Shown one piece after another: positions 7,695 through 48,415 of a DNA stretch of 64,000 nt. Position numbers and translations under genes: made by a program. The stretch lies in NCBI RefSeq assembly GCF_032444005.1, contig NW_027193546.1, positions 682,001 to 746,000 of the forward strand, written 5' to 3'. The notes under the pieces are model-generated. The model worked only from the letters and a program-made list of their open reading frames with translations. It did no database searches and was not told the DNA's origin. This DNA comes from Ranitomeya imitator (Eukaryota). The number at the start of each line of letters is the position of its first letter. Position 1 is the stretch's first letter.

Positions 7695-8015
<321 letters not shown>

Positions 8016-8061: not shown

Positions 8062-8842
8062 ACCCACATCTTCTAAGTGAGGGCTGCACCTGACTGCTAG
8101 GATCTGATTTCTCTGCTTTGGTGATGTCGCTGTAATGTTAGAACACTCATCGGTGCCAACGTTACGCTCCGAATACTGAATAGTCCCAAGGATATCCTGA
8201 CGTGGAAAGATTAAACGGCTTACCCGAAGCAGATCCCTCTACAGCTCTAATCAGGGGGGTGTTCAGGGCGGTTTCCAAATGTAGGTTAATATTCTGTCTA
8301 GACATTTAATATCCTGTTCTTATTGGGCGCTGATTAGTAGATTTATGGGGGATATATATCCGCACTGGGCCGCAGTGATAATTTCCTGATCAGATCCGTG
8401 TACAGGGAATGTGGCTGTAGGAGGCAGCTGGATAGATGGACGCCCTGTGTGTCATCACATAGGGTACGGCGACTCCTATATGATGACCACGTCCTGGACA
8501 CTAATGTTTCGGGTGGATGGCGCCTCTGAAGACTATTATAACCTCCTCAGAATAATGATGGGCTGTTTGAGGTCTGATAGCCACGGCTGCGCGTTTTGAG
8601 GTCCTGTCATGTATTTATATATATCCGGTGTGTGCAGTGTATGGGGGGACACAGGTGTTGGTTCTGTTCCCTACAGCTCCTGTCCTGTATATGTATATAC
8701 AAAGCGTATACATTGTGTGCAGTGTATGGGGGACACAGCGCTGCCGGGGCCTGGGGTGAAGGTGCCGCATCTGTGGATACTCTGGTAAAGAAAAGATCAG
8801 CTGGAAAACGGCACGTAAGGAGTTAAACGGGAGAGGAAAGAC

Positions 8843-9319
8843 GGGCAACAAAATTAATAAAGGGGATGGGAGAACTACAATACCCAGATAGATTAGCGAA
8901 ATTAGGATTATTTAGTCTAGAAAAAAGACGACTGAGGGGCGATCTAATAACCATGTATAAGTATATAAGGGGACAATACAAATATCTCGCTGAGGATCTG
9001 TTTATACCAAGGAAGGTGACGGGCACAAGGGGGCATTCTTTGCGTCTGGAGGAGAGAAGGTTTTTCCACCAACATAGAAGAGGATTCTTTACTGTTAGGG
9101 CAGTGAGAATCTGGAATTGCTTGCCTGAGGAGGTGGTGATGGCGAACTCAGTCGAGGGGTTCAAGAGAGGCCTGGATGTCTTCCTGGAGCAGAACAATAT
9201 TGTATCATACAATTAGGTTCTGTAGAGGGACGTAGATCTGGGGATTTGTTGTGATGGAGTGTGGGCTGAACTGGATGGACAGATGTCTTTTTTCGGCCTT
9301 ACTAACTATGTTACTATGT
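8843..9319 (+). mobile_element. CR1-clade LINE, 3' fragment (~480 bp)
   Basis: Near-identical to the reverse complement of 33548-34029; ends in the ACTAACTATGTTACTATGT tail. Confidence 0.93.
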
Positions 9320-9712
9320 ACATCACTGAAGGCTGAGCGTTACCAAGGTTTCTCGCTCATTGTCTGATCACAGAATCCGTTGGGGAATTTGAATTCCCCG
9401 CTCATAATCTCCGGAGGATTGTTACAGGTCACTGATAGCGACAACCATCCCCCACCCCCTTACTGCGGGACCTGCTAACTACATGTAGACCTCACCGCGG
9501 AGTATCAGACACTAAGGAGGGGACATTTCCTGCGAGCTTGGCAGACGACACTCCACCTGAGGGTCTGAGACTTCATGTGGGATTGACCCATTCATCTCCT
9601 GTTATTCTGTGGATATGTGCACCAACAATGGCGGCAATGGTGTATGAACTATCAGCCTCATGCGAGGACCCCCGAGATAGGCGGCGCCGGCTCTTGTGGT
9701 GACGGTGTGGGT

Positions 9713-10150: not shown

Positions 10151-10940
10151 GATGCCGATAACTAATGACGGAAAATCGTGTAGAGAAGAGTCTGTGCTGT
10201 GTCGCCTTATATAGTCCGTTGCTCCGCCCTCCTCTCCTGTCGTTGGACGGATCTGAAGATGAAAATGGAGAAGAGTATTGGAGATCCACCAATGAGCTAC
10301 AGAGGGCAGAGCTTATTATTGCTCCTTGCTCAAATGAGTTTCTCACCCAATAGAAAACGTTCGCTTTGGACAGAATAGATAAGGGGTGAAAACAGATATC
10401 TGTCCTGGAGCAGAAGGAAATGCAGAAATATTCTGTTGACTTGTTGTTTGCACTTGTTGGACTTGTGTCTTCTATCAGCCATATATTGCACTGACAGTCT
10501 GGCGGGTGAGGGGTTAATTCCTGTCAGGAGGAGGCTCCTCACTCACCCGCTTATTATCCTGTGCAGATCCCCTGTGGTGTCCGCGCTTATACTATCACAG
10601 CCTGACTGAGACAAGTCTCCTATGTTCTGCCCGGAGCCTGATGTGACGCTGCCGGGTCTCGGGTGGGGGAAGTCGCCGCTTCTGTAAAGCGAGTGTGTAG
10701 TGGGGGTCAGCACACACGGACACTGAGGAGTTAAATGGAGGCGGATATTCCTGTATCTGGGATTGGTCGGCGCCTGCGGATGTCTCTCGCTCATTGGCTG
10801 ATTACAGATCCGTTGCTGGTTTTGAATTCCCCGCTCAGTTTCTGCTCTTTGTCCGTCGGGTTTATTACCGGCCCCTCTGCTGGAGCGGCGATCGCTGAAA
10901 ATACCGGGTCCTGTCATCCCAGCTGTCTGCCCCCAAACAC

Positions 10941-11833
10941 CTCCGTGTCCTTGACCTGAGTGCACACCATTATCCTTGTTCATGTGATTTTTTGCTTGGT
11001 GTAGCACCGGTTTACCAGATGACGTCTGACATCTTCGCATACGACGACGCAACCAGTTCCAGCATCTTATCGCAAGTTTCAAACTCAAGTGAATTCTTGA
11101 AAACCCCTCCCCATGAGTTGAGGACGAGGGACTACGAGAAGGAGCGACGAAAATTAATCTCATATGATTTACACTGCATAACTTTGGCAGAACATCATAA
11201 ACAGGGCAAGATCCCGAGAGGTCTTAGGTGCAACCTGCGCCCAACACTTTTTTCTGAAGATCCCGATTACTGTGACAAATACAAGAGAATACTAAATAAA
11301 TGTTCTTTAGACATCATTATTCTGACCATTGAATTTCTACAAAAGGCTATTACGGAAACAAAGGACAGTATTAGAGCAATTGAAACACAACTATCTTCTA
11401 CATTGGCATCCACAGACTCTTACTTTTCGCTGCTCCGGACAGTATTCCCTTCATCGCCTCTGGTTGCCTTGTAAATATTGTACATATTATATTTTATATT
11501 TTGGTGTATGTTTATTATTTTGTCTTTTTTGTTCTTATTCGTTTTCTATTACATATAATGTTATGTCACATACAGTTACTTATACTGTTTATTTGCTTTC
11601 CTAGTAACCCCATGAATAAGACCCGGGAGGGTCGAAACGTCGGGTTTCTATCTACGAATTATCACAGTGGCAATTGTTGACTTGTTTTCGTGAATAAATC
11701 TGGCATATACCTTTTGCATCATACCAGTTTCGAGTGTGCGGTATTTTTTCTTCTACTATTAACTTGACCACACGGTCTGTTTTACCAGCACCTCCGTGTC
11801 CTTGACCTGAGTGCACACCATTATCCTTGTTCA
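10941..11833 (+). mobile_element. Internally deleted Penelope-like retroelement
   Basis: 13-bp target duplication TGCCCCCAAACAC (10928-10940 and 11834-11846); 44-bp terminal direct repeats; ORF N-terminus with LH...KIPRGLR...ILNKCS motif; degenerate hammerhead-like GACCC-GGGA-GGGTC-GAAAC near 11620-11640; AATAAA; paralogous empty site at 16282-16294. Confidence 0.65.
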
Positions 11834-12364
11834 TGCCCCCAAACACGGGCGGGGATCGGTCGCCATTATTACTCTGGGGAGGTTATAATAACCTTCATAG
11901 GCGCCATCCATCCGAAACATTAGTGTCCGGGACGTGGTCATCACATAGGAGTCTCCGTACCCGGTACACAGGGCGTCCATCTATCCAGCTGCCTCAGACA
12001 GCCACATTCCCTGTGAATATTCGCTGCCCTATTCACCCCACACGGATCTGATCAGGAGAATATTACTGTACAGCCCATTTCCCTGTAAATCCGTGTTCTA
12101 TTTATTTTATATATCAATAAGAAGAAACCGCATTTGTGCTGTGATGGGAGTCACCAGTACTTGGGGCATCTTACAGTCAGACTTGTGATCGGATCTCTCT
12201 GCACTGCAGTGGTTTTATCTCACGTCATATTAACCCTATGAGATCTATGGCATTCGTTTTACATTATTACATCTAGTGCTAGAGGATCCTATCCTGCAAT
12301 TGTATTGGGATATTTCTCCCATGATTCGTTGTTCCCCTCCACATTCTCGGAACTTCTACATGTG

Positions 12365-13272: not shown

Positions 13273-14261
13273 TATTGCCCGAGAGCCGCCAGTCCTGACA
13301 CTAGATGAAGCGGGGGAGGAAAAGTGATAGAACAGAAGGACGATCAGTAACTGAGCAGGGATCCTGTGACGGCCGATAATGTAACTGCCTGACCTGTGAG
13401 ATCCTGACACCACAGGGTAATGTTCTAAGCAGGGACACTCCGCAATCTTCTACACATGATCCTACATTTCCCATCACAGACCTCCTGCCTGCAGCCGTAG
13501 GACTGATCTGTAATGGGGAGACATGGTGGGATCTGCTGGGAAGGGCAGAATTTGTCTTCCCTGAAATGTCTCTTGTAGGATATGTCCCTGACCAGTATAT
13601 CGTCTCCATAATACGGATTGTGACGGGAAAGGGACGATCTGATCGTCTCCAGGTCAGACACACGGGAACATCACAGCATGTGGAGAACACGAATCATTCT
13701 CTATATCCATGAGAGGAAACCGGAGCGGATACAGCGCCGCTAACCTGGAAATCTGCAGATTCCTGTGTGGGATGTAAGAGACCAATGATCGCTCAACACA
13801 AGCAGATTTCCCGATATCGGCCCTGGGACCAGGTGTTATATGAAGACAAAAGACGGAAAAAAGCGGGAACCGTAAACGTGTTACCATTGGAAACATTAGC
13901 TCCTCCCTCTGCTGATTGGCTGAACACAGGACGGTTGGGGGTTTGAATTTCCCGCCGCTTCTAAATGTAATGACGTCACTTACACTGTAAAAAGAATCCA
14001 GATTAGGCTCTAGATCAACTCCACCACAAATGGCTCCTGTTACCTGAGAAACGAGAGTAATGAACTAATAAACGAGACCCCAGAATGCCGAGATCTGTGC
14101 AGCAAGGAGTTAAATAAGAAGTCCCTGAATACACATCAACTCGCTGAGCAATGCCCAGATAATTCCTGAGATTTTCTCACCATCTCCCTCGTCACCAGGC
14201 GCAGAGCCCAGGGCGGAGCGAGCAGACACCTCGGGGAGACGGGAGAGGACACCGGAGCAGT

Positions 14262-14355: not shown

Positions 14356-14385
14356 TTTGGGGTGAGGAGCGGAGCACGGANNNNN

Positions 14386-14784
<399 letters not shown>

Positions 14785-14950: not shown

Positions 14951-15571
14951 TTCCCAAATCATTGCTTCATCTTTGCAGCGGGGATGCTGTATAGCGCTGT
15001 AAAACCCTGTATAATGCTCTATACATCTAAATAGTGCTGTGAAGCTCCATATACCGCAGTGCACCCTCATATAGCGCTGTATGTGTTCATGTTCTATTTA
15101 CCCTTCATAGTGCTGTTATTCATCTGAATAGTGCAGAGTACCCCCATATACTGCAACCTACTGACAAATGACTGTGCCACATTATGCAGGCAGTTACAGT
15201 ACAGCGCCCGACATGTTACACTCCGTATAGTGCAGTAATATCTCCAGATGGTGCTGGAAACCCCAGCTAGTCAGCTGTGCCAGGACTGCAAACCCTGTGA
15301 ATTCAGTGAGATGTTTCGGTAGTAGCCGCACCCAGTTTTCTAGGAAGAGCCGGCTTCCCTCAGGAGCTGTGTCCCCTGTATAAACTGCACTTATCCCTCC
15401 TGTGTGTGATCTCAGTAACATGAAGCCGGATCAGTCACTTCAGCCACGAATCTCTGCTCTGTGGTGACCGCAGTACAGTGGAGCACGGATCGTGTATAGT
15501 GACCTCTATATACCGCCTGGTGCAGTGTGAACCATCAGTGTGATCAGCGGTGCGGCTCTTAGGAGGAGGAT

Positions 15572-15980
15572 GTGGGGGCTCTTAGAAGAGCCTTTGAGTG
15601 TGTGGACAGATGTGGAGGAGCGGAGTTTACAGTCCTGGCACAGCAGACTAGCCGCTTCCTGGATCTACGAGGAAACGGCCATTATCTGTCCCAATCACTG
15701 CACAAAGTCCTCCTTCAATAAGGGCTAATTTCCAGCTATCTGCAGATTATTCCGAGGCTGAGTTCTGCGAGCGACACTCAATTTGCACTGACAGTCTGGC
15801 GGGTGAGGGGTTAATCCCTGTCAGTGTTTCTCCTCCGCTCCATCTGCACAGGAGGCGGCTCCTCACTCACCCGCGTATTATCCTGTGCAGATCCCCTGTG
15901 GTGTCCGCGCTGATCCTATCACAGCCTGACTGAGACAAGTCTCCTATGTTCTGCCCGGAGCCTGATGTGACGCTGCCGGG
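15572..15980 (-). ncRNA. Candidate non-coding transcript ending in an orphan histone stem-loop (ends inferred)
   Basis: Stem-loop 15577-15592 with AAGAGCCGCA 16 nt downstream; no histone ORF; H4-like promoter at 16005-16157; donor CGG|GTGAGT at 15871/15870; acceptor TTTCCTCGTAG| at 15665/15664. Confidence 0.4.
15577..15592 (-). terminator. Orphan histone stem-loop
   Basis: Minus strand CAAA GGCTCT TCTA AGAGCC CCCAC; the upstream CTCCGCTCCTC is shared with the H2B 3' UTR. Confidence 0.9.
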
Positions 15981-17200
15981 TTTCGGGTGGGGGAAGTCGC
16001 CGCTTCTATAAAGCGAGTGAGTAGTGGGGGTCAGCACACACGGACACTAAGGAGTTAATGGGGGCGGATGTTCCTGTATCTGGGATTGGTCGGCGCCTGT
16101 GGATGTCTCTCGCTCATTGGCTGATTACAGATCCGTTGCTGGTTTTGAATTTCCCGCTCAATCGCTTTTCTTTGTCCGTCGGATTATTACCGGCCCCTCT
16201 GCTGGAGCGGCGATCGCTGTGTATACCGGTGGGAGCAGCTCTACCCCGCTGATAATACCGGGTCCTGTCCTCCCAACTGTCTGCCCCCAAACACGGGGAT
16301 CAGTCGCCATTATTATTCTGAGGAGGTTATAATAGTCTTCAGAGGCGACATCCATCCGACACATTAGTGTCCAGGACTTGGTCATCACACAGGAGCCTCC
16401 GTACCCGGTACACAGGGCGTCCATCTATCCAGCTGCCTCTTACAGCCACATTCCCTGTACACGGATCTGATCAGGAAATTATCACTGCGGCCCAGTGCGG
16501 ATATATATCCCCCATGAATCCATGTTATCTTTGTAGGTCAATGAGAAGAAACCGCATCACCCGAAGTCCGCGGTGAAAGACGGGGGAGCAGACACGGCCC
16601 CAGTATGTCAGGACCCGGGAGCATACAACTAGCACGTCCGAGGCTGAGGCCGGTACTACAGGCAGCCGCACAGGGGATATTTTGCCCTGCAGAGACGCTG
16701 AGCCGGATACTAATCAATCAGCGCCCAATAAGAACAGGATCTTAAATGTCTAGACAGAATATTAACCTACATTTGGAAACCGCCCGGAACCCCCCTGATT
16801 AGAGCTGTAGAGAGATCTGCTTCCAATAAGCCTTTCCACGTCAGGATATCCTTCGGAAACTGAATGTGTGGGAATATGGTTAAAGAGACCCTACTCCCAG
16901 ATCATACACACACGGAATCCGTCGGGTACAAAACAGGATTAGCAAATAGGTCTCACAACCAAAAGCAGCGACAGAACCATCCGCCCAAAAACGGCATCAG
17001 AGGACGTTACCGAACTGCGGATCAGGGTCAGAATTACCATTCCCCACAATTATTTGGCCGATGGTAGTTTTCGACTATTCAGTATTCGGAGCGTAAATTC
17101 GGCACCGATGAGTGTTCTACTAACATTACAGCGACATCACCACAGCAGAGAAATGAGATCCTAGCAGTCAGGTGCAGCCTCTCACTTAGAAGATGTGGGT

Positions 17201-17567: not shown

Positions 17568-18076
17568 TTAATGAGCAAATACTGATTCCTGAGCCTCAGG
17601 GACTGCACCTTTATATGGAGGGAGAATGGACCAGAGAGAGAACTGCAGAGATGACGCACTTCCGGGACGGGGCTTACAGACTCTACATTAGCTCCTCCCT
17701 TTCTCTGCTGATTGGCTAAATACTAAACTGTAGGGAAGTTTGATTTTCCCGCTCATTGCTCAGTTTCTGCAATTATCTTTCCAGCTTCTATTATGTGTAA
17801 TTTCCTTCCCTTATGATTGAGGGTATCCTAAATATTGTCATTACTGTTCCAGATCATGGTGGATCATATCTTCCACAACAGATGATGCCCCCAGTTACCC
17901 TCCACACAGTATGATGCCTCCTACACAGTAAGATACCCACACAGCAGGATGTCCCCACAGTTACTGTGTGGGGGTATAATACCCCCAGTAACTCCCCAAA
18001 CAGTATGATGCCCTAAGTCCCCCCCCACACACACACACACACACTTTGATGCACCCACAGTTATCCCCTATACAAT

Positions 18077-18591
18077 GTAACATAGTAACATAGTTAGTAA
18101 GGCCGAAAAAATACATTTGTCCTTCCAGTTCAGCCTATATTCCATCATAATAAATCCCCAGATCTACGTCCTTCTACAGAACCTAATAATTGTATGATAC
18201 AATATTGTTCTGCTCCAGGAATACATCCAGGCCTCTCTTGAACCCCTCGACTGAGTTCGCCATCACCACCTCCTCAGGCAAGCAATTCCAGATTCTCACT
18301 GCCCTAACAGTAAAGAATCCTCTTCTATGTTGGTGGAAAAACCTTCTCTCTTCCAGACGCAAAGAATGCCCCCTTGTGCCCGTCACCTTCCTTGGTATAA
18401 ACAGATCCTCAGCGAGATATTTGTATTGTCCCCTTATATACTTATACATGGTTATTAGATCGCCCCGTCTTTTTTCTAGACTAAATAATCCTAATTTCGC
18501 TAACCTATCTGGGTATTGTAGTTCTCCCATTCCCTTTATTAATTTTGTTGGCCTCCTTTGTACTCTCTCTAGTTCCATTATATCCTTCCTG
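18077..18591 (-). mobile_element. CR1-clade LINE, 3' fragment (~515 bp)
   Basis: Matches 33541-34067 including the GTAACATA tail; 6-bp in-frame deletion (KRRLRGD to KRRGD). Confidence 0.93.
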
Positions 18592-19123: not shown

Positions 19124-19381
19124 TCATACTCACCTCATACTGGCGCGGTCTCTGCTTCTCAGATAGTCTCTGGCGCCTGCATCTCTTCCTGTAATGAGTG
19201 GTACCACGTGACCACTAAACAAAGTAATGAATACATACGTGGCTCCACTCCCACAGGCGTGGAGCGCATATTCATTACTTTAATGAGCGGTACCATGACG
19301 AACACAGGAACAAGTTGCCGGCACCAGAGACCATCGGAGAAGCAGGGACTTGCAGAGACGCTGCCAGGAGGGTGAGTATGA
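19124..19381. mobile_element. MITE-like nested palindromic element
   Basis: Perfect inverted repeats TCATACTCACC/GGTGAGTATGA (ends), GGTCTCTG/CAGAGACC, AAAGTAATGAATA/TATTCATTACTTT (19221-19233/19269-19281) and CTCCAC/GTGGAG; no ORF. Confidence 0.5.
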
Positions 19382-20173
19382 CGGGGGAGGGTGAGCCATG
19401 CATATTCACCTGTTCCGACGCGTATCCGGGGGAGATTGCTAGTAGAAATTTTGCAATTAGCTCCTAGCTCCTCCCTTTCGTCTGATTGGTTGAGCACAGA
19501 ACGGTTGGAGATTTTGAATTTTCCACTTATTGTGCTCTTCTTTTCCCGCTTCTCTATTCTTCTCATCTCAGCGTCGCTTAGATCTGTTGGTTATTTTGAT
19601 TTTTACTTCCATTGTAGTTTCGGTTGTTATTTTCCAGCTTGTTATAAAGTAGAATAAAAAATACATTTTAAGGACACTGATCTACAGATAACTCATCTGA
19701 TCCCCGGCAGTCACTCATCATTACACGTGGTGCCCGACTGGTGGCCATTACCGGTCACTGCAGAGCAGGGAGCTGTATGTAACCAGACCCCCGGCGACAC
19801 CAGCCACAGATAAGATGAGAAAACTCAAATATATGATAATTACAACCTAAAGCCGCAAGACTGCAGAGGCGGCACTAGGACCCCATTTACGTCTGCGCTG
19901 TACAGAAACCGCGCCTCCACCACCAAAGACCCGGGCTGTGCACAGCGCACACTTTACCCTGTCCTTATAAAACGTCAGTCATGTAATTGATGTCGCACTT
20001 TTGGACTTGGTGAGAATAAAGGATGCGCGGAGCGGTAACTGGAATATCGCTGATCACCTACAATATCGGACACAGCAGCCGGCTATTACCTTTCCTGACC
20101 GCGCTCCGTATATGGAGAATACGCGCAGAAGAGAGACCGTTCAGGACTCGGCTCATTTGTGGGAGGATTTGGT

Positions 20174-33540: not shown

Positions 33541-36500
33541 AACATAGTAACATAGTAACATAGTTAGTAAGGCCAAAAAAAGACATTTGTCCATCCAGTT
33601 CAGCCTATATTCCATCATAATAAATACCCAGATCTACGTCCTTCTACAGAACCTAATAATTGTATGATACAATATTGTTCTGCTCCAGGAAGACATCCAG
33701 GCCTCTCTTGAACCCCTCGACTGTGTTCGCCATCACCACCTCCTCAGGCAAGCAATTCCAGATTCTCACTGCCCTAACAGTAAAGAATCCTCTTCTATGT
33801 TGGTGGAAAAACCTTCTCTCCTCCAGACGCAAATAATGCCCCCTTGTGCCCCTCACCTTCCTTGGTATAAACAGATCCTCAGCGAGATATTTGTATTGTC
33901 CCCTTATATACTTATACATGGTTATTAGATCACCCCTCAGTCGTCTTTTTTCTAGACTAAATAATCCTAATTTCGCTAATCTATCTGGGTATTGTAGTTC
34001 TCCCATCCCCTTTATTAATTTTGTTGCCCTCCTTTGTACTCTCTCTAGTTCCATTATATCCTTCCTGAGCACCGGTGCCCAAAACTGGACACAGTACTCC
34101 ATGTGCGGTCTAACTAGGGATTTGTACAGAGGCAGTATAATGCTCTCATCATGTGTATCCAGACCTCTTTTAATGCACCCCATGATCCTGTTTGCCTTGG
34201 CAGCTGCTGCCTGGCACTGGCTGCTCCAGGTAAGTTTATCATTAACTAGGATCCCCAAGTCCTTCTCCCTGTCAGATTTACCCAGTGATTTCCCGTTCAG
34301 TGTGTAATGGTGATATTGATTCCCTCTTCCCATGTGTATAACCTTACATTTATCATTGTTAAACCTCATCTGCCACCTTTCAGCCCAAGTTTCCAACTTA
34401 TCCAGATCCATCTGTAGCAGAATACTATCTTCTCTTGTATTAACTGCTTTACATAGTTTTGTATCATCTGCAAATATCGATATTTTACTGTGTAAACCTT
34501 CTACCAGATCATTAATGAATATGTTGAAGAGAACAGGTCCCAATACTGACCCCTGCGGTACCCCACTGGTCACAGCGACCCAGTTAGAGACTATACCATT
34601 TATAACCACCCTCTGCTTTCTATCACTAAGCCAGTTACTAACCCATTTACACACATTTTCCCCCAGACCAAGCATTCTCATTTTGTGTACCAACCTCTTG
34701 TGCGGCACGGTATCAAACGCTTTGGAAAAATCGAGATATACCACGTCCAATGACTCACCGTGGTCCAGTCTATAGCTTACCTCTTCATAAAAACTGATTA
34801 GATTGGTTTGACAGGAGCGAGTTCTCATAAACCCATGCTGATATGGAGTTAAACAGTTATTCTCATTGAGATAATCCAGAATAACATCCCTCAGAAACCC
34901 TTCAAATATTTTACCAACAATAGAGGTTAGACTTACTGGCCTATAATTTCCAGGTTCACTTTTAGAGCCCTTTTTGAATATTGGCACCACATTTGCTATG
35001 CGCCAGTCCTGCGGAACAGACCCTGTCGCTATAGAGTCACTAAAAATAAGAAATAATGGTTTATCTATTACATTACTTAGTTCTCTTAGTACTCGTGGGT
35101 GTATGCCATCCGGACCTGGAGATTTATCTATTTTAATCTTATTTAGCCGGTTTCGCACCTCTTCTTGGGTTAGATTGGTGACTCTTAATATAGGGTTTTC
35201 ATTGTTTCTTGGGATTTCACCTAGCATTTCATTTTCCACCGTGAATACCGTGGAGAAGAAGGTGTTTAATATGTTAGCTTTTTCCTCGTCATCTACAACC
35301 ATTCTTTCCTCACTATTTTTTAAGGGGCCTACATTTTCAGTTTTTATTCTTTTACTATTGATATAGTTGAAGAACAGTTTGGGATTAGTTTTACTCTCCT
35401 TAGCAATGTGCTTCTCTGTTTCCTTTTTGGCAGCTTTAATTAGTTTTTTAGATAAAGTATTTTTCTCCCTATAGTTTTGTAGAGCTTCAATGGTGCCATC
35501 CTGCTTTAGTAGTGCAAATGCTTTCTTTTTACTGTTAATTGCCTGTCTTACTTCTTTGTTTAGCCACATTGGGTTTTTCCTATTTCTAGTCCTTTTATTC
35601 CCACAAGGTATAAACCGCTTACACTGCCTATTTAATGTGTTCTTAAACATTTCCCATTTATTATCTGTATTCTCATTTCTGAGGATATTGTCCCAGTCTA
35701 CCAGATTAAGGGCATCTCTAAGCTGTTCAAACTTTGCCTTCCTAAAGTTCAGTGTTTTTGTGACTCCCTGACAAGTCCCCCTAGTGAAAGACAGGTGAAA
35801 CTGCACAATATTGTGGTCGCTATTTCCTAAATGCCCAACCACCTGCAGATTTGTTATTCTGTCAGGTCTATTAGATAGTATTAGGTCTAAAAGTGCTGCT
35901 CCTCTGGTTGGATTCTGCACCAATTGTGAAAGATAATTTTTCTTGGTTATTAGCAGAAACCTGTTGCCTTTATGGGTTTCACAGGTTTCTGTTTCCCAGT
36001 TAATATCCGGGTAGTTAAAGTCCCCCATAACCAGGACCTCATTATGGGTTGCAGCTTCATCTATTTGCTTTAGAAGTAGACTTTCCATGGTTTCTGTTAT
36101 ATTTGGGGGTTTGTAACAGACCCCAATGAGAATTTTGTTACCATTTTTCCCTCCATGAATTTCGACCCATATGGACTCCACATCCTCATTCCCTTCGCTA
36201 ATATCCTCCCTTAAAGTGGACTTTAGACAAGACTTTACATAGAGACAAACCCCTCCTCCTCTCCGATTTTTACGATCCTTTCTAAACAGACTGTAACCCT
36301 GTAAGTTAACTGCCCAGTCATAGCTTTCATCTAACCATGTCTCGGTTATTCCCACTATGTCAAAGTTACCTGTAGATATTTCTGCTTCTAGTTCTTCCAT
36401 CTTGTTTGTCAGGCTTCTGGCGTTTGCGAGCATGCAGTTTAGAGGATTTTGTTTTGTTCAAATCTCCTCACTGTGGATTGTTTTAGAAATGTTCTTACCT

Positions 36501-47821: not shown

Positions 47822-48415
47822 ACCCACATCTTCTAAGTGAGGGCTGCACCTGACTGCTAGGATCTGATTTCTCTGCTTTGGTGATGTCGCTGTAATGTTA
47901 GAACACTCATCGGTGCCAACGTTACGCTCCGAATACTGAATAGTCCCAAGGATATCCTGACGTGGAAAGATTAAACGGCTTACCCGAAGCAGATCCCTCT
48001 ACAGCTCTAATCAGGGGGGTGTTCAGGGCGGTTTCCAAATGTAGGTTAATATTCTGTCTAGACATTTAATATCCTGTTCTTATTGGGCGCTGATTAGTAG
48101 ATTTATGGGGGATATATATCCGCACTGGGCCGCAGTGATAATTTCCTGATCAGATCCGTGTACAGGGAATGTGGCTGTAGGAGGCAGCTGGATAGATGGA
48201 CGCCCTGTGTGTCATCACATAGGGTACGGCGACTCCTATGTGATGACCACGTCCTGGACACTAATGTTTCGGGTGGATGGCGCCTCTGAAGACTATTATA
48301 ACCTCCTCAGAATAATGATGGGCTGTTTGAGGTCTGATAGCCACGGCTGCGCGTTTTGAGGTCCTGTCATGTATTTATATATATCCGGTGTGTGCAGTGT
48401 ATGGGGGGACACAGG

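What the first reader, a model, noticed from the sequence alone, without database searches (positions are those of the whole stretch)
15551..16157. Candidate spliced non-coding RNA gene that ends in a histone stem-loop
Seen on the minus strand, in order: E2F/CHR/MYB/CCAAT module (16157-16114), second CCAAT (16089-16085), GC box (16067-16060), TATA-like TATAGAAG (16010) with GC-to-TATA spacing of ~49 bp versus ~47 bp at the H4 promoter, strong donor CGG|GTGAGT (15871/15870), acceptor TTTCCTCGTAG| (15665/15664), an intact stem-loop (15592-15577), and AAGAGCCGCA 16 nt later. No histone ORF is present and the predicted first exon has no ATG. An 11-mer before the hairpin (CTCCGCTCCTC) is shared with the H2B 3' UTR. 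Established: stem-loop/U7 3' ends are essentially specific to replication-dependent histone mRNAs, which are intronless. Inference: a ~410-nt (or ~200-nt spliced) cell-cycle-regulated, SLBP-bound, non-polyadenylated ncRNA, or a decayed H2B remnant. The TATA is imperfect and also reads TATAAA on the plus strand.
Basis: partly seen in the sequence, partly recalled or inferred. Interest (0 to 1): 0.75.

Follow-up and report, generated by a model that had tools for sequence, protein, structure and literature searches.

The report
Orphan histone end-signal beside spacer exon
In a poison-frog histone gene cluster, a leftover histone message-end signal sits about 280 bases behind a duplicated spacer piece that looks like a histone H4 promoter and holds an exon-like stretch. 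The two look joined by rearrangement, not built as a new RNA gene, and whether any RNA is made here could not be tested.

Summary
The reading as one dedicated gene is weak.

- **Promoter, exon 1 and donor.** They belong to a roughly 510-bp spacer element (16300-15783). It recurs at 10940-10486, about 95% identical, in front of H2A and with no stem-loop behind it.
- **Promoter origin.** The promoter is a diverged copy of the local H4 promoter. Its distal module occurs 8 times in the window: 3 real H4 promoters and 5 orphans.
- **The "TATA".** It is broken in the second copy and reads better as a 3' splice site.
- **The stem-loop and HDE.** This is an 80-nt H2A/H2B-type 3'-UTR fragment, about 10 bits weaker than its functional neighbours. 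It lies inside a 387-bp unit bracketed by 28-nt inverted repeats.
- **Gene body.** No histone coding relic is detectable.

Best reading: a rearrangement composite of a spacer exon and the relic 3' end of a lost H2A-type gene.

Transcription is untested.

The parts
16301..16500 (-). Spacer segment X, the conserved 3' flank of H4 genes. It is continuous with the element below.
   Evidence: About 90% identical to 8360-8561, 48120-48321 and 11834-12014. It lies a few hundred nt to about 700 nt downstream of an H4 stem-loop in units A, D and B.
15783..16300 (-).
   Evidence: Aligns with 10940-10486 (copy C): about 95% identity outside two indels of 32 and 27 bp, 89% mean column identity including gaps and flanks. 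Megablast gives 94% over 383 bp.
16105..16160 (-). Distal promoter module of H4 type. It matches E2F-like GCGGGAAA, inverted CHR TTCAAA, CAACGG and CAGCCAAT.
   Evidence: Eight copies in the window against 0.21 expected. Three sit in real H4 promoters (7514+, 47274+, 17752-). Five are orphans, all on the minus strand (19526, 16157, 13955, 10834, 9401). Alignment A2.
16060..16089 (-). Second CCAAT (16089-16085) and GC box (16067-16060).
   Evidence: Read. They align with the CTAAT and GCCCCGCCCC of the H4 promoters.
16003..16034 (-). Stretch with two possible readings. As a TATA-like box: TATAGAAG, 16010-16003. As a 3' splice site: branch-point-like CTGAC (16034-16030), a pyrimidine-rich tract, then TAG|A with AG at 16007-16006.
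   Evidence: Copy C reads TACAGAAG, so there is no TATA but a CAG|A acceptor. The P0001 exon peptide starts at 16004, one base after the AG.
15871..16005 (-). Exon-like segment of 135 nt. It has no ATG and no sign of coding constraint.
   Evidence: P0001 residues 127-169 match 16004-15876 at 91%, and residues 127-170 match 10680-10549 at 89%. The substitutions between copies B and C in this stretch are 3 non-synonymous to 1 synonymous, by my own hand count on the alignment.
15865..15870 (-). GTGAGT 5' splice-site consensus (CGG|GTGAGT).
   Evidence: Identical in copy C at 10546. The P0001 junction falls here or 1 nt away.
15799..15875 (-). Hairpin whose 8-bp GC-rich stem (GCGGGUGA/UCACCCGC) buries the donor GU.
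   Evidence: Fold energy -32.3 kcal/mol, z -3.1. Copy C has the same stem with a 27-nt shorter loop, z -3.8.
15653..15782 (-). Stretch found only here in the window, of unknown origin.
   Evidence: Nothing in the window resembles it. The acceptor has a short pyrimidine tract and no CTRAY branch point.
15625..15652 (.). Arm 1 of a 28-nt inverted repeat.
   Evidence: 93% complementary to 15266-15293, with 331 nt between the arms.
15542..15622 (-). Orphan histone 3'-UTR fragment of H2A/H2B type, with stem-loop 15592-15577 and HDE AAGAGCC at 15560-15554.
   Evidence: 77% over 84 nt to the H2A 3' end (9756-9676) and 83% over 54 nt to the H2B 3' end. Rfam Histone3 scores 23.9 bits here, against 33.2 for H2A, 34.4 for H2B and 37.5-37.8 for H4. 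The A of ACCCA after the stem is missing.
15266..15293 (.). Arm 2 of the 28-nt inverted repeat. Together the arms bound a 387-bp unit that holds the orphan stem-loop.
10486..10940 (-). Copy C of the spacer element. It abuts the H2A/H2B-type bidirectional promoter and the H2A gene, and has no orphan stem-loop.
   Evidence: Upstream it is separated from its X segment by an 890-bp insertion with 43-bp terminal direct repeats.

Best explanation
The finding is a composite of two DNA pieces with separate histories, brought together by rearrangement of a tandem histone cluster. It is not a purpose-built non-coding RNA gene.

Piece 1 (16500-15783) is old spacer that follows H4 genes. It contains a diverged H4-type promoter. 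Downstream of that lies a 135-nt exon-like segment (16005-15871) with a good 3' splice site in front and a consensus 5' splice site behind. The same piece sits in front of H2A at 10940-10486. In another Ranitomeya imitator assembly, a gene model uses this segment as an internal exon that joins H2B to H2A. I infer that the segment is spliced into read-through transcripts that run from one histone gene into the next. Mammals make comparable spliced, polyadenylated H2B and H4 transcripts that use downstream exons.

Piece 2 (15652-15266) is a 387-bp unit bounded by 28-nt inverted repeats. It carries an 80-nt 3'-UTR, stem-loop and HDE fragment of H2A/H2B type. By position it corresponds to the 3' end of the H2A gene that follows copy C, so it is most likely what remains of a lost H2A-type gene copy.

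Any polymerase passing through could be cut here by SLBP/U7, because the signal is nearly intact. It could come from read-through of the H4 gene 1.6 kb upstream or from the weak H4-like promoter. That would be a by-product.

Shown: the sequence relationships and the existence of the gene model. Inferred: the splicing in this genome, the deletion history and the lack of function.
For: 1. **The element is a separately duplicated unit.** Copy B and copy C are about 95% identical and diverge abruptly at 15783/10486. Copy C continues into the H2A promoter. Their divergence matches that of the two H4 units (92.5%), so there is no sign of extra constraint.
2. **The promoter is one of several orphan H4-promoter copies.** There are five orphans in 12 kb. 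This copy lacks the GGTCC box that lies about 20-25 nt upstream of the TATA in all three real H4 promoters. Its TATA is not conserved in copy C.
3. **P0001 uses the segment as an internal exon.** It reads H2B, then 44 aa from the exon-like segment, then the H2A 5' UTR and H2A. The R. imitator genome paper annotated with MAKER est2genome from transcripts only (10.1101/706671).
4. **There is published precedent.** Spliced, polyadenylated H2B and H4 read-through mRNAs that use a downstream exon are described in PMC5100578 and PMC3661734.
5. **The stem-loop fragment looks like a relic.** Homology to histone genes is limited to about 80 nt, starting right after the stop-codon position of H2A. It scores 9-10 bits below the same-type functional signals. 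It is bracketed by a 28-nt inverted repeat. Its flanks match nothing else in the window.
6. **There is no coding relic.** tblastn gives E of 0.4 or worse. Pfam finds no histone family; its one hit is a sub-threshold zinc_ribbon_6 match on one piece. Alignment of the body to the H4, H2A and H3 gene bodies gives z below 1.3.
7. **Stray 3'-end signals are common in this genome.** Earlier scan notes report histone 3'-end signals amplified and scattered without evidence of use. I did not check those notes.
Against: - No RNA data were obtained, so absence of function is an inference from structure only.
- The stem, loop, 5' AAA flank and HDE are all intact. The promoter module is well preserved (0 of 14 mismatches to the H4 version) and CpG observed/expected is high there (0.89-0.93). 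A decaying relic might be expected to look worse.
- An unchecked note (s1-295104) reports the same 608-nt structure in another array unit. That fits conservation as well as it fits hitch-hiking in a recent array duplication.
- The link between P0001's assembly (GCA_958301615.1) and the MAKER est2genome annotation of the paper is probable but not verified. One gene model is thin evidence.
- No sequence similarity links the 130-nt stretch at 15782-15653 to any part of unit C, so the deletion scenario is not demonstrated.
Confidence: 0.55

Rival explanations
1. This is a dedicated, cell-cycle-regulated non-coding RNA gene. The H4-like promoter starts transcription near 15980. The 15871-15664 intron is removed, or not. 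The RNA is then cut after the stem-loop by U7/SLBP, giving a 200- to 410-nt non-polyadenylated RNA bound by SLBP.
For: - All signals are present in the right order and on one strand.
- The distance from TATA to stem-loop is 418 nt, against 399 nt in the H4 gene.
- The promoter is colinear with the H4 promoter.
- The stem-loop and HDE are nearly intact.
- The donor is conserved in copy C.
- The same structure is said to recur 204 kb away (unchecked).
Against: - The TATA is not conserved in copy C and reads better as a 3' splice site, which P0001 uses.
- The H4-specific GGTCC box is absent.
- The promoter and exon also occur without any stem-loop (unit C).
- The stem-loop lies in a separate unit bounded by inverted repeats.
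- The 15665 acceptor is weak and unique to this copy.
- The donor is buried in a stable hairpin.
- Introns are reported to prevent stem-loop-directed processing (PMC3661734).
- No RNA holder was found among the listed runs.
Confidence: 0.08
2. A transcribed relic. The weak H4-like promoter still fires in S phase and yields an unspliced RNA of about 410 nt, cut at the relic stem-loop. This would be a pseudogene-like transcript with no function of its own.
For: Same signals as above. The promoter module is identical to the H4 version over 14 of 14 nt. CpG observed/expected is 0.89-0.93 over the promoter, suggesting little germ-line methylation. No ORF and no coding relic are present.
Against: The proximal promoter is degenerate: no GGTCC box and an imperfect TATA that is not conserved. 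No expression data exist. CpG observed/expected is fairly high across the whole cluster, so it does not discriminate.
Confidence: 0.15
3. A fail-safe terminator. The orphan stem-loop and HDE are kept because they cut and terminate polymerases that read through from the H4 gene (17558-17247), or through the spacer exon, before they reach the H2B promoter 600 nt downstream. This would prevent transcriptional interference.
For: All genes from 20.6 to 9.7 kb lie on the same strand. The orphan signal sits between H4 and the H2B promoter. Read-through at histone loci, and coupling of 3' cleavage with termination, are documented in Drosophila (PMC4896052).
Against: Unit C has no such signal between the element and H2A. 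The signal is weaker than functional ones. There is no comparative or RNA evidence. This genome holds many unused-looking copies of such signals.
Confidence: 0.1
4. Origin variant. The 387-bp unit bounded by 28-nt inverted repeats is a small foldback or MITE-like mobile element that captured a histone 3' end and inserted behind the spacer element.
For: The 28-nt arms are 93% complementary, with the histone-like 80 nt starting 3 nt inside one arm. The unit is absent from copy C.
Against: No target-site duplication is seen at the ends. No second copy exists in the 64-kb window. Genome copy number could not be measured.
Confidence: 0.12

Closest known systems
Spliced, polyadenylated read-through transcripts of replication-dependent histone genes (human HIST1H2BC/D/K, HIST1H2AC, HIST1H4H, HIST2H4; PMC5100578, PMC3661734)
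   Same: A histone transcript escapes stem-loop cleavage. A 5' splice site near the stop codon or after the stem-loop is joined to a downstream exon in the spacer. The R. imitator model P0001 has this form, with the element's 135-nt segment as the downstream exon.
   Different: Here the downstream exon is spliced onward into the next histone gene (H2B-exon-H2A), not into a poly(A) site. Evidence is one gene model in another assembly, not reads. In the unit under study the upstream gene is H4, and an orphan stem-loop follows the exon.
Histone pseudogenes and orphons (solitary or truncated histone gene copies in animal genomes)
   Same: Recognisable promoter and 3'-end signals of histone type without an intact histone ORF, lying in or near a cluster.
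   Different: No trace of coding sequence remains. The promoter (H4 type) and the 3' end (H2A/H2B type) come from different gene classes, so it is a chimera of fragments and not one decayed gene.
Satellites and minisatellites grown from histone 3'-processing signals in this same genome (earlier scan notes)
   Same: The cleavage-site and HDE part of histone genes is copied as DNA outside genes, with no shown use.
   Different: This is a single copy that keeps the whole 3' UTR and stem-loop. It is not a tandem array of the post-hairpin segment.
Histone 3' UTR stem-loop, Rfam RF00032
   Same: A 6-bp GGCUCU/AGAGCC stem, a UCUA loop that fits UYUN, a 5' AAA flank, and an HDE 16 nt downstream.
   Different: It scores 23.9 bits, below the gathering score of 34. 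The conserved A after the stem is missing. It is not attached to a histone ORF.

Membership tests
Replication-dependent histone gene | Open reading frame with a histone fold | tested here: not met
   tblastn with the window's H4, H2A, H3 and H2B N-terminus gives E of 0.4 or worse. The H2B part of P0001 gives E of 5 or worse in the candidate. Pfam finds no histone family in 10 stop-free pieces.
Replication-dependent histone gene | 3' stem-loop plus HDE at the right spacing | tested here: met
   Stem-loop 15592-15577, with AAGAGCC 16 nt after it. Rfam gives 23.9 bits, E 5e-4. That is below the gathering score, and below the 33-38 bits of the neighbouring genes.
Histone pseudogene (one decayed gene) | Residual similarity of the body to a histone gene body | tested here: not met
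   Local and global alignment against the H4, H2A and H3 bodies gives z from -0.6 to 1.3 against shuffles. The H2B body is masked in the window and I left it so. The protein-level test was negative.
H4-type promoter | Distal module, CCAAT/CTAAT, GC box and TATA in H4 order and spacing | tested here: met
   MAFFT alignment A2. The module recurs 8 times.
H4-type promoter | Proximal GGTCC element upstream of the TATA (the H4 subtype-specific element, from general knowledge; present in all three H4 promoters here) | tested here: not met
   It is absent from 16060-16010 in the candidate and from copy C.
Spliced read-through histone transcript with a downstream exon | Downstream exon with a consensus 3' splice site (and here a 5' splice site) | tested here: met
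   CTGAC, pyrimidine tract and TAG|A at 16034-16005, then CGG|GTGAGT at 15871|15870. Both are kept in copy C.
Spliced read-through histone transcript with a downstream exon | Junction-spanning RNA evidence | tested here: inconclusive
   Only indirect. P0001 joins H2B, the exon and H2A, and the species' published annotation was transcript-based.
Spliced read-through histone transcript with a downstream exon | 5' splice site in the upstream histone gene's 3' part | not testable with these tools
   The H2B 3' part is masked (14381-14665).
MITE or foldback element | Terminal inverted repeats, target-site duplication and multiple copies | tested here: inconclusive
   Inverted repeats are present: 28 nt, 93%. 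No target-site duplication was seen, and no second copy exists in the window. The genome could not be searched.

The most novel reading that the evidence does not exclude
The H4-derived promoter drives a short, ORF-less RNA that is cleaved at the orphan stem-loop and bound by SLBP. That would be a non-histone, cell-cycle-coupled RNA using the histone 3'-end pathway, kept in several array units of a poison-frog histone cluster. It could act as a decoy or buffer for SLBP/U7. A related version is that the 135-nt spacer exon links successive histone genes into spliced multi-gene transcripts as a regular feature of this cluster.
Probability: 0.1. Interest if true: 0.75.

Novelty: new variant of a known kind. 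Interest (0 to 1): 0.33.

Why it matters
The stem-loop/U7 pathway is thought to serve histone mRNAs almost exclusively. A true non-coding client would therefore be notable, but the evidence here points to a chimera of gene fragments.

The more useful result is a side product. A conserved spacer element in this frog's histone cluster carries an exon with good splice sites, and a gene model joins H2B to H2A through it. This suggests that amphibian tandem histone clusters also make spliced read-through transcripts like those in mammalian differentiated tissues, and it gives exact junctions to test.

The finding also shows how easily promoter and 3'-end fragments of different histone genes can be recombined into gene-like units that can mislead annotation.

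Tried and rejected
**Read evidence**
- The look-up of sequencing runs listed nine runs, coded X1-X9, none on record as RNA. Six hold at least part of the stretch.
No read evidence exists.
The Rfam search stops at 17190, and scripts from then on mask those places.
- One exception to disclose: the local self-BLAST, run in the closed sandbox, still contained them.

**Fetching related DNA**
- The exact H2A look-up found four assemblies: GCA_051348905.1, GCA_039654945.1, GCA_032444005.1 and GCA_958301615.1. No DNA was served. The same happened for P0001.
- Exact look-up of 10 small ORFs found nothing in the collection.
- The word search with the 57-aa piece found nothing. The search with the P0001 exon part found only P0001 itself.

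**Hypotheses tested and rejected**
- Decayed H4, H2A, H3 or H2B gene body: rejected.
- The element as an H2B gene on the opposite strand: rejected, since its plus-strand ORFs do not resemble H2B by eye.
- The element as a solo LTR or other transposon with TG..CA ends: rejected. The apparent 5' boundary is only an 890-bp insertion in copy C, and the homology continues into segment X.

**Uninformative or nothing found**
- CpG observed/expected as a mark of activity: does not discriminate.
- Rfam: nothing but Histone3. The mir-6790 and mir-593 hits are noise, E above 1.
- Search for a described non-histone RNA ending in a histone stem-loop: none found in two literature searches.

**Left alone**
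- The N run at 14381-14665 was left unfilled. P0001 contains an H2B part from another assembly. I used it only as a query against the candidate region.
Full report
**Setting**

The window holds a vertebrate histone cluster. Earlier notes of this scan call the genome a poison frog, most likely Ranitomeya imitator. I did not verify that myself, but the only outside relative I found is from that species.

On the minus strand between 20.6 and 9.7 kb the order is as follows:

| Feature | Position |
|---|---|
| H3 | about 20630-20219 |
| H4 | 17558-17247 |
| The finding | 16157-15551 |
| H2B | 14766 to about 14390, partly N-masked |
| H2A | 10150-9758 |

An H4 gene on the plus strand lies at 7704-8015. 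H1 genes with long 36-bp satellites fill much of the rest.

**Observation**

The details are in the observation check.

The stem-loop GGCTCTTCTAAGAGCC is identical to those of the H2A and H2B genes. Its HDE core AAGAGCC is also theirs. Rfam's Histone3 model scores it at 23.9 bits, against 33.2 for H2A, 34.4 for H2B and 37.5-37.8 for H4. The clearest difference in the alignment is the missing A of the ACCCA that follows the stem. The signal is therefore real, and slightly degraded.

**The promoter, exon 1 and donor are a duplicated spacer element**

A self-comparison shows that 16229-15783 recurs at 10907-10486. With the alignment, the shared block runs from about 16300 to 15783.
- Identity is about 95%, plus two indels of 32 and 27 bp. 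The two H4 gene units are 92.5% identical.
- Upstream, the block is continuous with segment X (16500-16301). X also follows the H4 genes at 8360-8561 and 48120-48321, and it occurs at 11834-12068.
- In copy C, X and the element are separated only by an 890-bp insertion with 43-bp terminal direct repeats.
- Downstream, the two copies part abruptly. Copy C runs into a 326-bp H2A promoter region and the H2A gene. Copy B runs into 130 nt of sequence found nowhere else in the window, followed by an inverted-repeat arm and then the orphan stem-loop.

**The promoter is a diverged H4 promoter, one of five orphans**

The distal module GCGGGAAATTCAAA..CAGCCAAT occurs eight times, against 0.21 expected. 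Three copies are in the three H4 promoters. Five are orphans at 19526, 16157, 13955, 10834 and 9401, all on the minus strand.

A multiple alignment puts the candidate's second CCAAT, GC box and TATAGAAG opposite the CTAAT, GC box and TATAAAGG of the H4 promoters.

Two things weaken the promoter reading:
- The candidate lacks the GGTCC box found in front of the TATA in all three real H4 promoters.
- Its TATA is TACAGAAG in copy C.

**The "TATA" reads better as a 3' splice site, and a gene model uses it so**

In both copies the stretch reads gtgCTGACccccactac(t/a)cactcgcttta(t/c)AG|AAGCGG. That is a branch-point consensus 25 nt before the AG, a pyrimidine-rich tract, and then TAG or CAG.

A word search with the ORF that happens to run through copy C found one protein, P0001. 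It is 305 aa, an "unnamed protein product" of Ranitomeya imitator from assembly GCA_958301615.1. It consists of:
- a complete H2B;
- 44 residues that are the translation of 16004-15876 (91% identical, 43 residues aligned) or 10680-10549 (89% identical);
- eight residues of H2A 5' UTR;
- a complete H2A.

The model must therefore splice from the H2B stop-codon region to the AG at the equivalent of 16007-16006. The window has cattAG|ttatcggcatcATG at that place. The gene spans 2628 bp.

The genome paper of this species states that annotation used MAKER with est2genome=1 and transcript evidence only (10.1101/706671). If P0001 comes from that annotation, an assembled transcript stands behind it. 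That is likely, because the assembly is ENA-derived and carries unnamed products, but I could not verify it.

The segment is not under coding constraint. By my hand count on the alignment, copies B and C differ in it by three non-synonymous changes and one synonymous change. In the window, the same splicing would shift the H2A frame.

I read 16005-15871 as a non-coding linker exon. Mammals make comparable RNAs. Several H2B genes use a conserved 5' splice site between the stop codon and the stem-loop and join it to a downstream exon. Some H4 and H2A genes splice after the stem-loop (PMC5100578; PMC3661734).

**The orphan stem-loop is a separate fragment**

Sensitive BLAST limits the histone homology to 15622-15542. 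It is 77% over 84 nt to the H2A 3' end, starting two bases after the H2A stop codon, and 83% over 54 nt to the H2B 3' end.

The fragment begins 3 nt inside one arm of a 28-nt inverted repeat. The arms lie at 15652-15625 and 15293-15266 and are 93% complementary. The 387-bp unit they bound, and the 130 nt before it, match nothing else in the window.

By position, the orphan signal stands where the H2A 3' end stands after copy C. The simplest history is a duplicated unit of H4, X, element and an H2A-type gene. One copy lost H4, leaving the promoter stump at 13955. The other lost the H2A-type gene apart from its 3' end. The deletion itself is not demonstrated.

**No coding relic**

- tblastn with the window's own histones gives no hit better than E 0.4.
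- tblastn with the H2B part of P0001 gives nothing better than E 5 in the candidate.
- Pfam on ten stop-free pieces finds no histone family. Its only hit is a sub-threshold zinc_ribbon_6 match on one piece.
- Alignment of the body to the H4, H2A and H3 bodies is indistinguishable from shuffles.

The donor is a good consensus and is conserved. However, GTRAGT is not enriched on this strand: 4 sites against 7 expected. The donor GU also lies in an 8-bp GC-rich stem conserved in both copies.

The 15665 acceptor has a short pyrimidine tract and no branch-point consensus, and it lies in the part unique to copy B.

[quoted passage not shown] 1990). That speaks against a spliced RNA ending in the stem-loop.

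**Expression**

This was not testable. The run search listed nine runs, none on record as RNA, and six of them hold at least part of the stretch. I worked beside those places afterwards; the exception is named under Tried and rejected. CpG observed/expected is high at the candidate promoter (0.89-0.93), but it is fairly high across the whole cluster.

**Verdict**

The single-gene interpretation is the less likely reading. I put about 0.55 on a rearrangement composite of a spacer linker exon and the relic 3' end of a lost H2A-type gene. I put about 0.15 on a transcribed but functionless relic and about 0.1 on a fail-safe terminator role. The inverted-repeat mobile-element origin (about 0.12) concerns history and can combine with any of these.

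Nothing like a non-histone RNA ending in a histone stem-loop turned up in two literature searches. If reads later show one here it would be notable.

The scan noted the same structure on other DNA of this genome (s1-295104, unchecked).

Noticed in passing
window 19526-19130 (-), 13964-13800 (-), 9404-9348 (-): Three further orphan copies of the H4-promoter distal module lie behind H3, H2B and H2A. The one at 13955 keeps the H4 promoter up to GAGCTAATG and then breaks off. The one at 19526 is followed 393 nt later by a consensus donor, GAG|GTGAGT, at 19133. The one at 9401 is cut by a CR1-like insertion (9347-8843).
   Followed up: partly
window 10941-11833: An 890-bp insertion into copy C of the spacer. 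It has 43-bp terminal direct repeats (tgaacaaggataatggtgtgcactcaggtcaaggacacggagg). The host sequence gtgtttggggg appears on both sides, which looks like a target-site duplication. It carries a 160-aa ORF on the plus strand (10992-11474).
   Followed up: no
window 10400-10486 (+ strand reading): Upstream of H2A, the H2B side of a normal divergent H2A/H2B promoter survives up to a TATA-like catatatt, with a degenerate octamer ATGCAGAAAT. It ends exactly at the junction with spacer copy C. The partner H2B gene was therefore replaced there, and the usual divergent H2A-H2B pair is split in this cluster.
   Followed up: partly
GCA_958301615.1 locus of P0001 (no DNA served): The neighbouring gene model starts 181 bp after P0001 and spans 7.5 kb. 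It encodes 366 aa with an H4-like domain (CENP-T_C) and a linker-histone domain. It looks like a second fused model, H4 joined to H1, through some other linking sequence. It did not share the 44-aa exon peptide.
   Followed up: no
window 15799-15875 and 10501-10551 (-): A stable hairpin whose stem contains the GTGAGT donor is kept in both spacer copies although the loop differs by 27 nt (z -3.1 and -3.8). Its role is unknown. Rfam microRNA hits on the opposite strand are noise (E above 1).
   Followed up: partly
window 8843-9319, 18075-18590, 33550-34067: Three CR1/LINE-like fragments, 95-97% identical, are inserted in the histone cluster spacers. Their ORFs contain MGELQYPDRLAKLGLFSLEKRR.
   Followed up: no
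I saw this.
   Followed up: no
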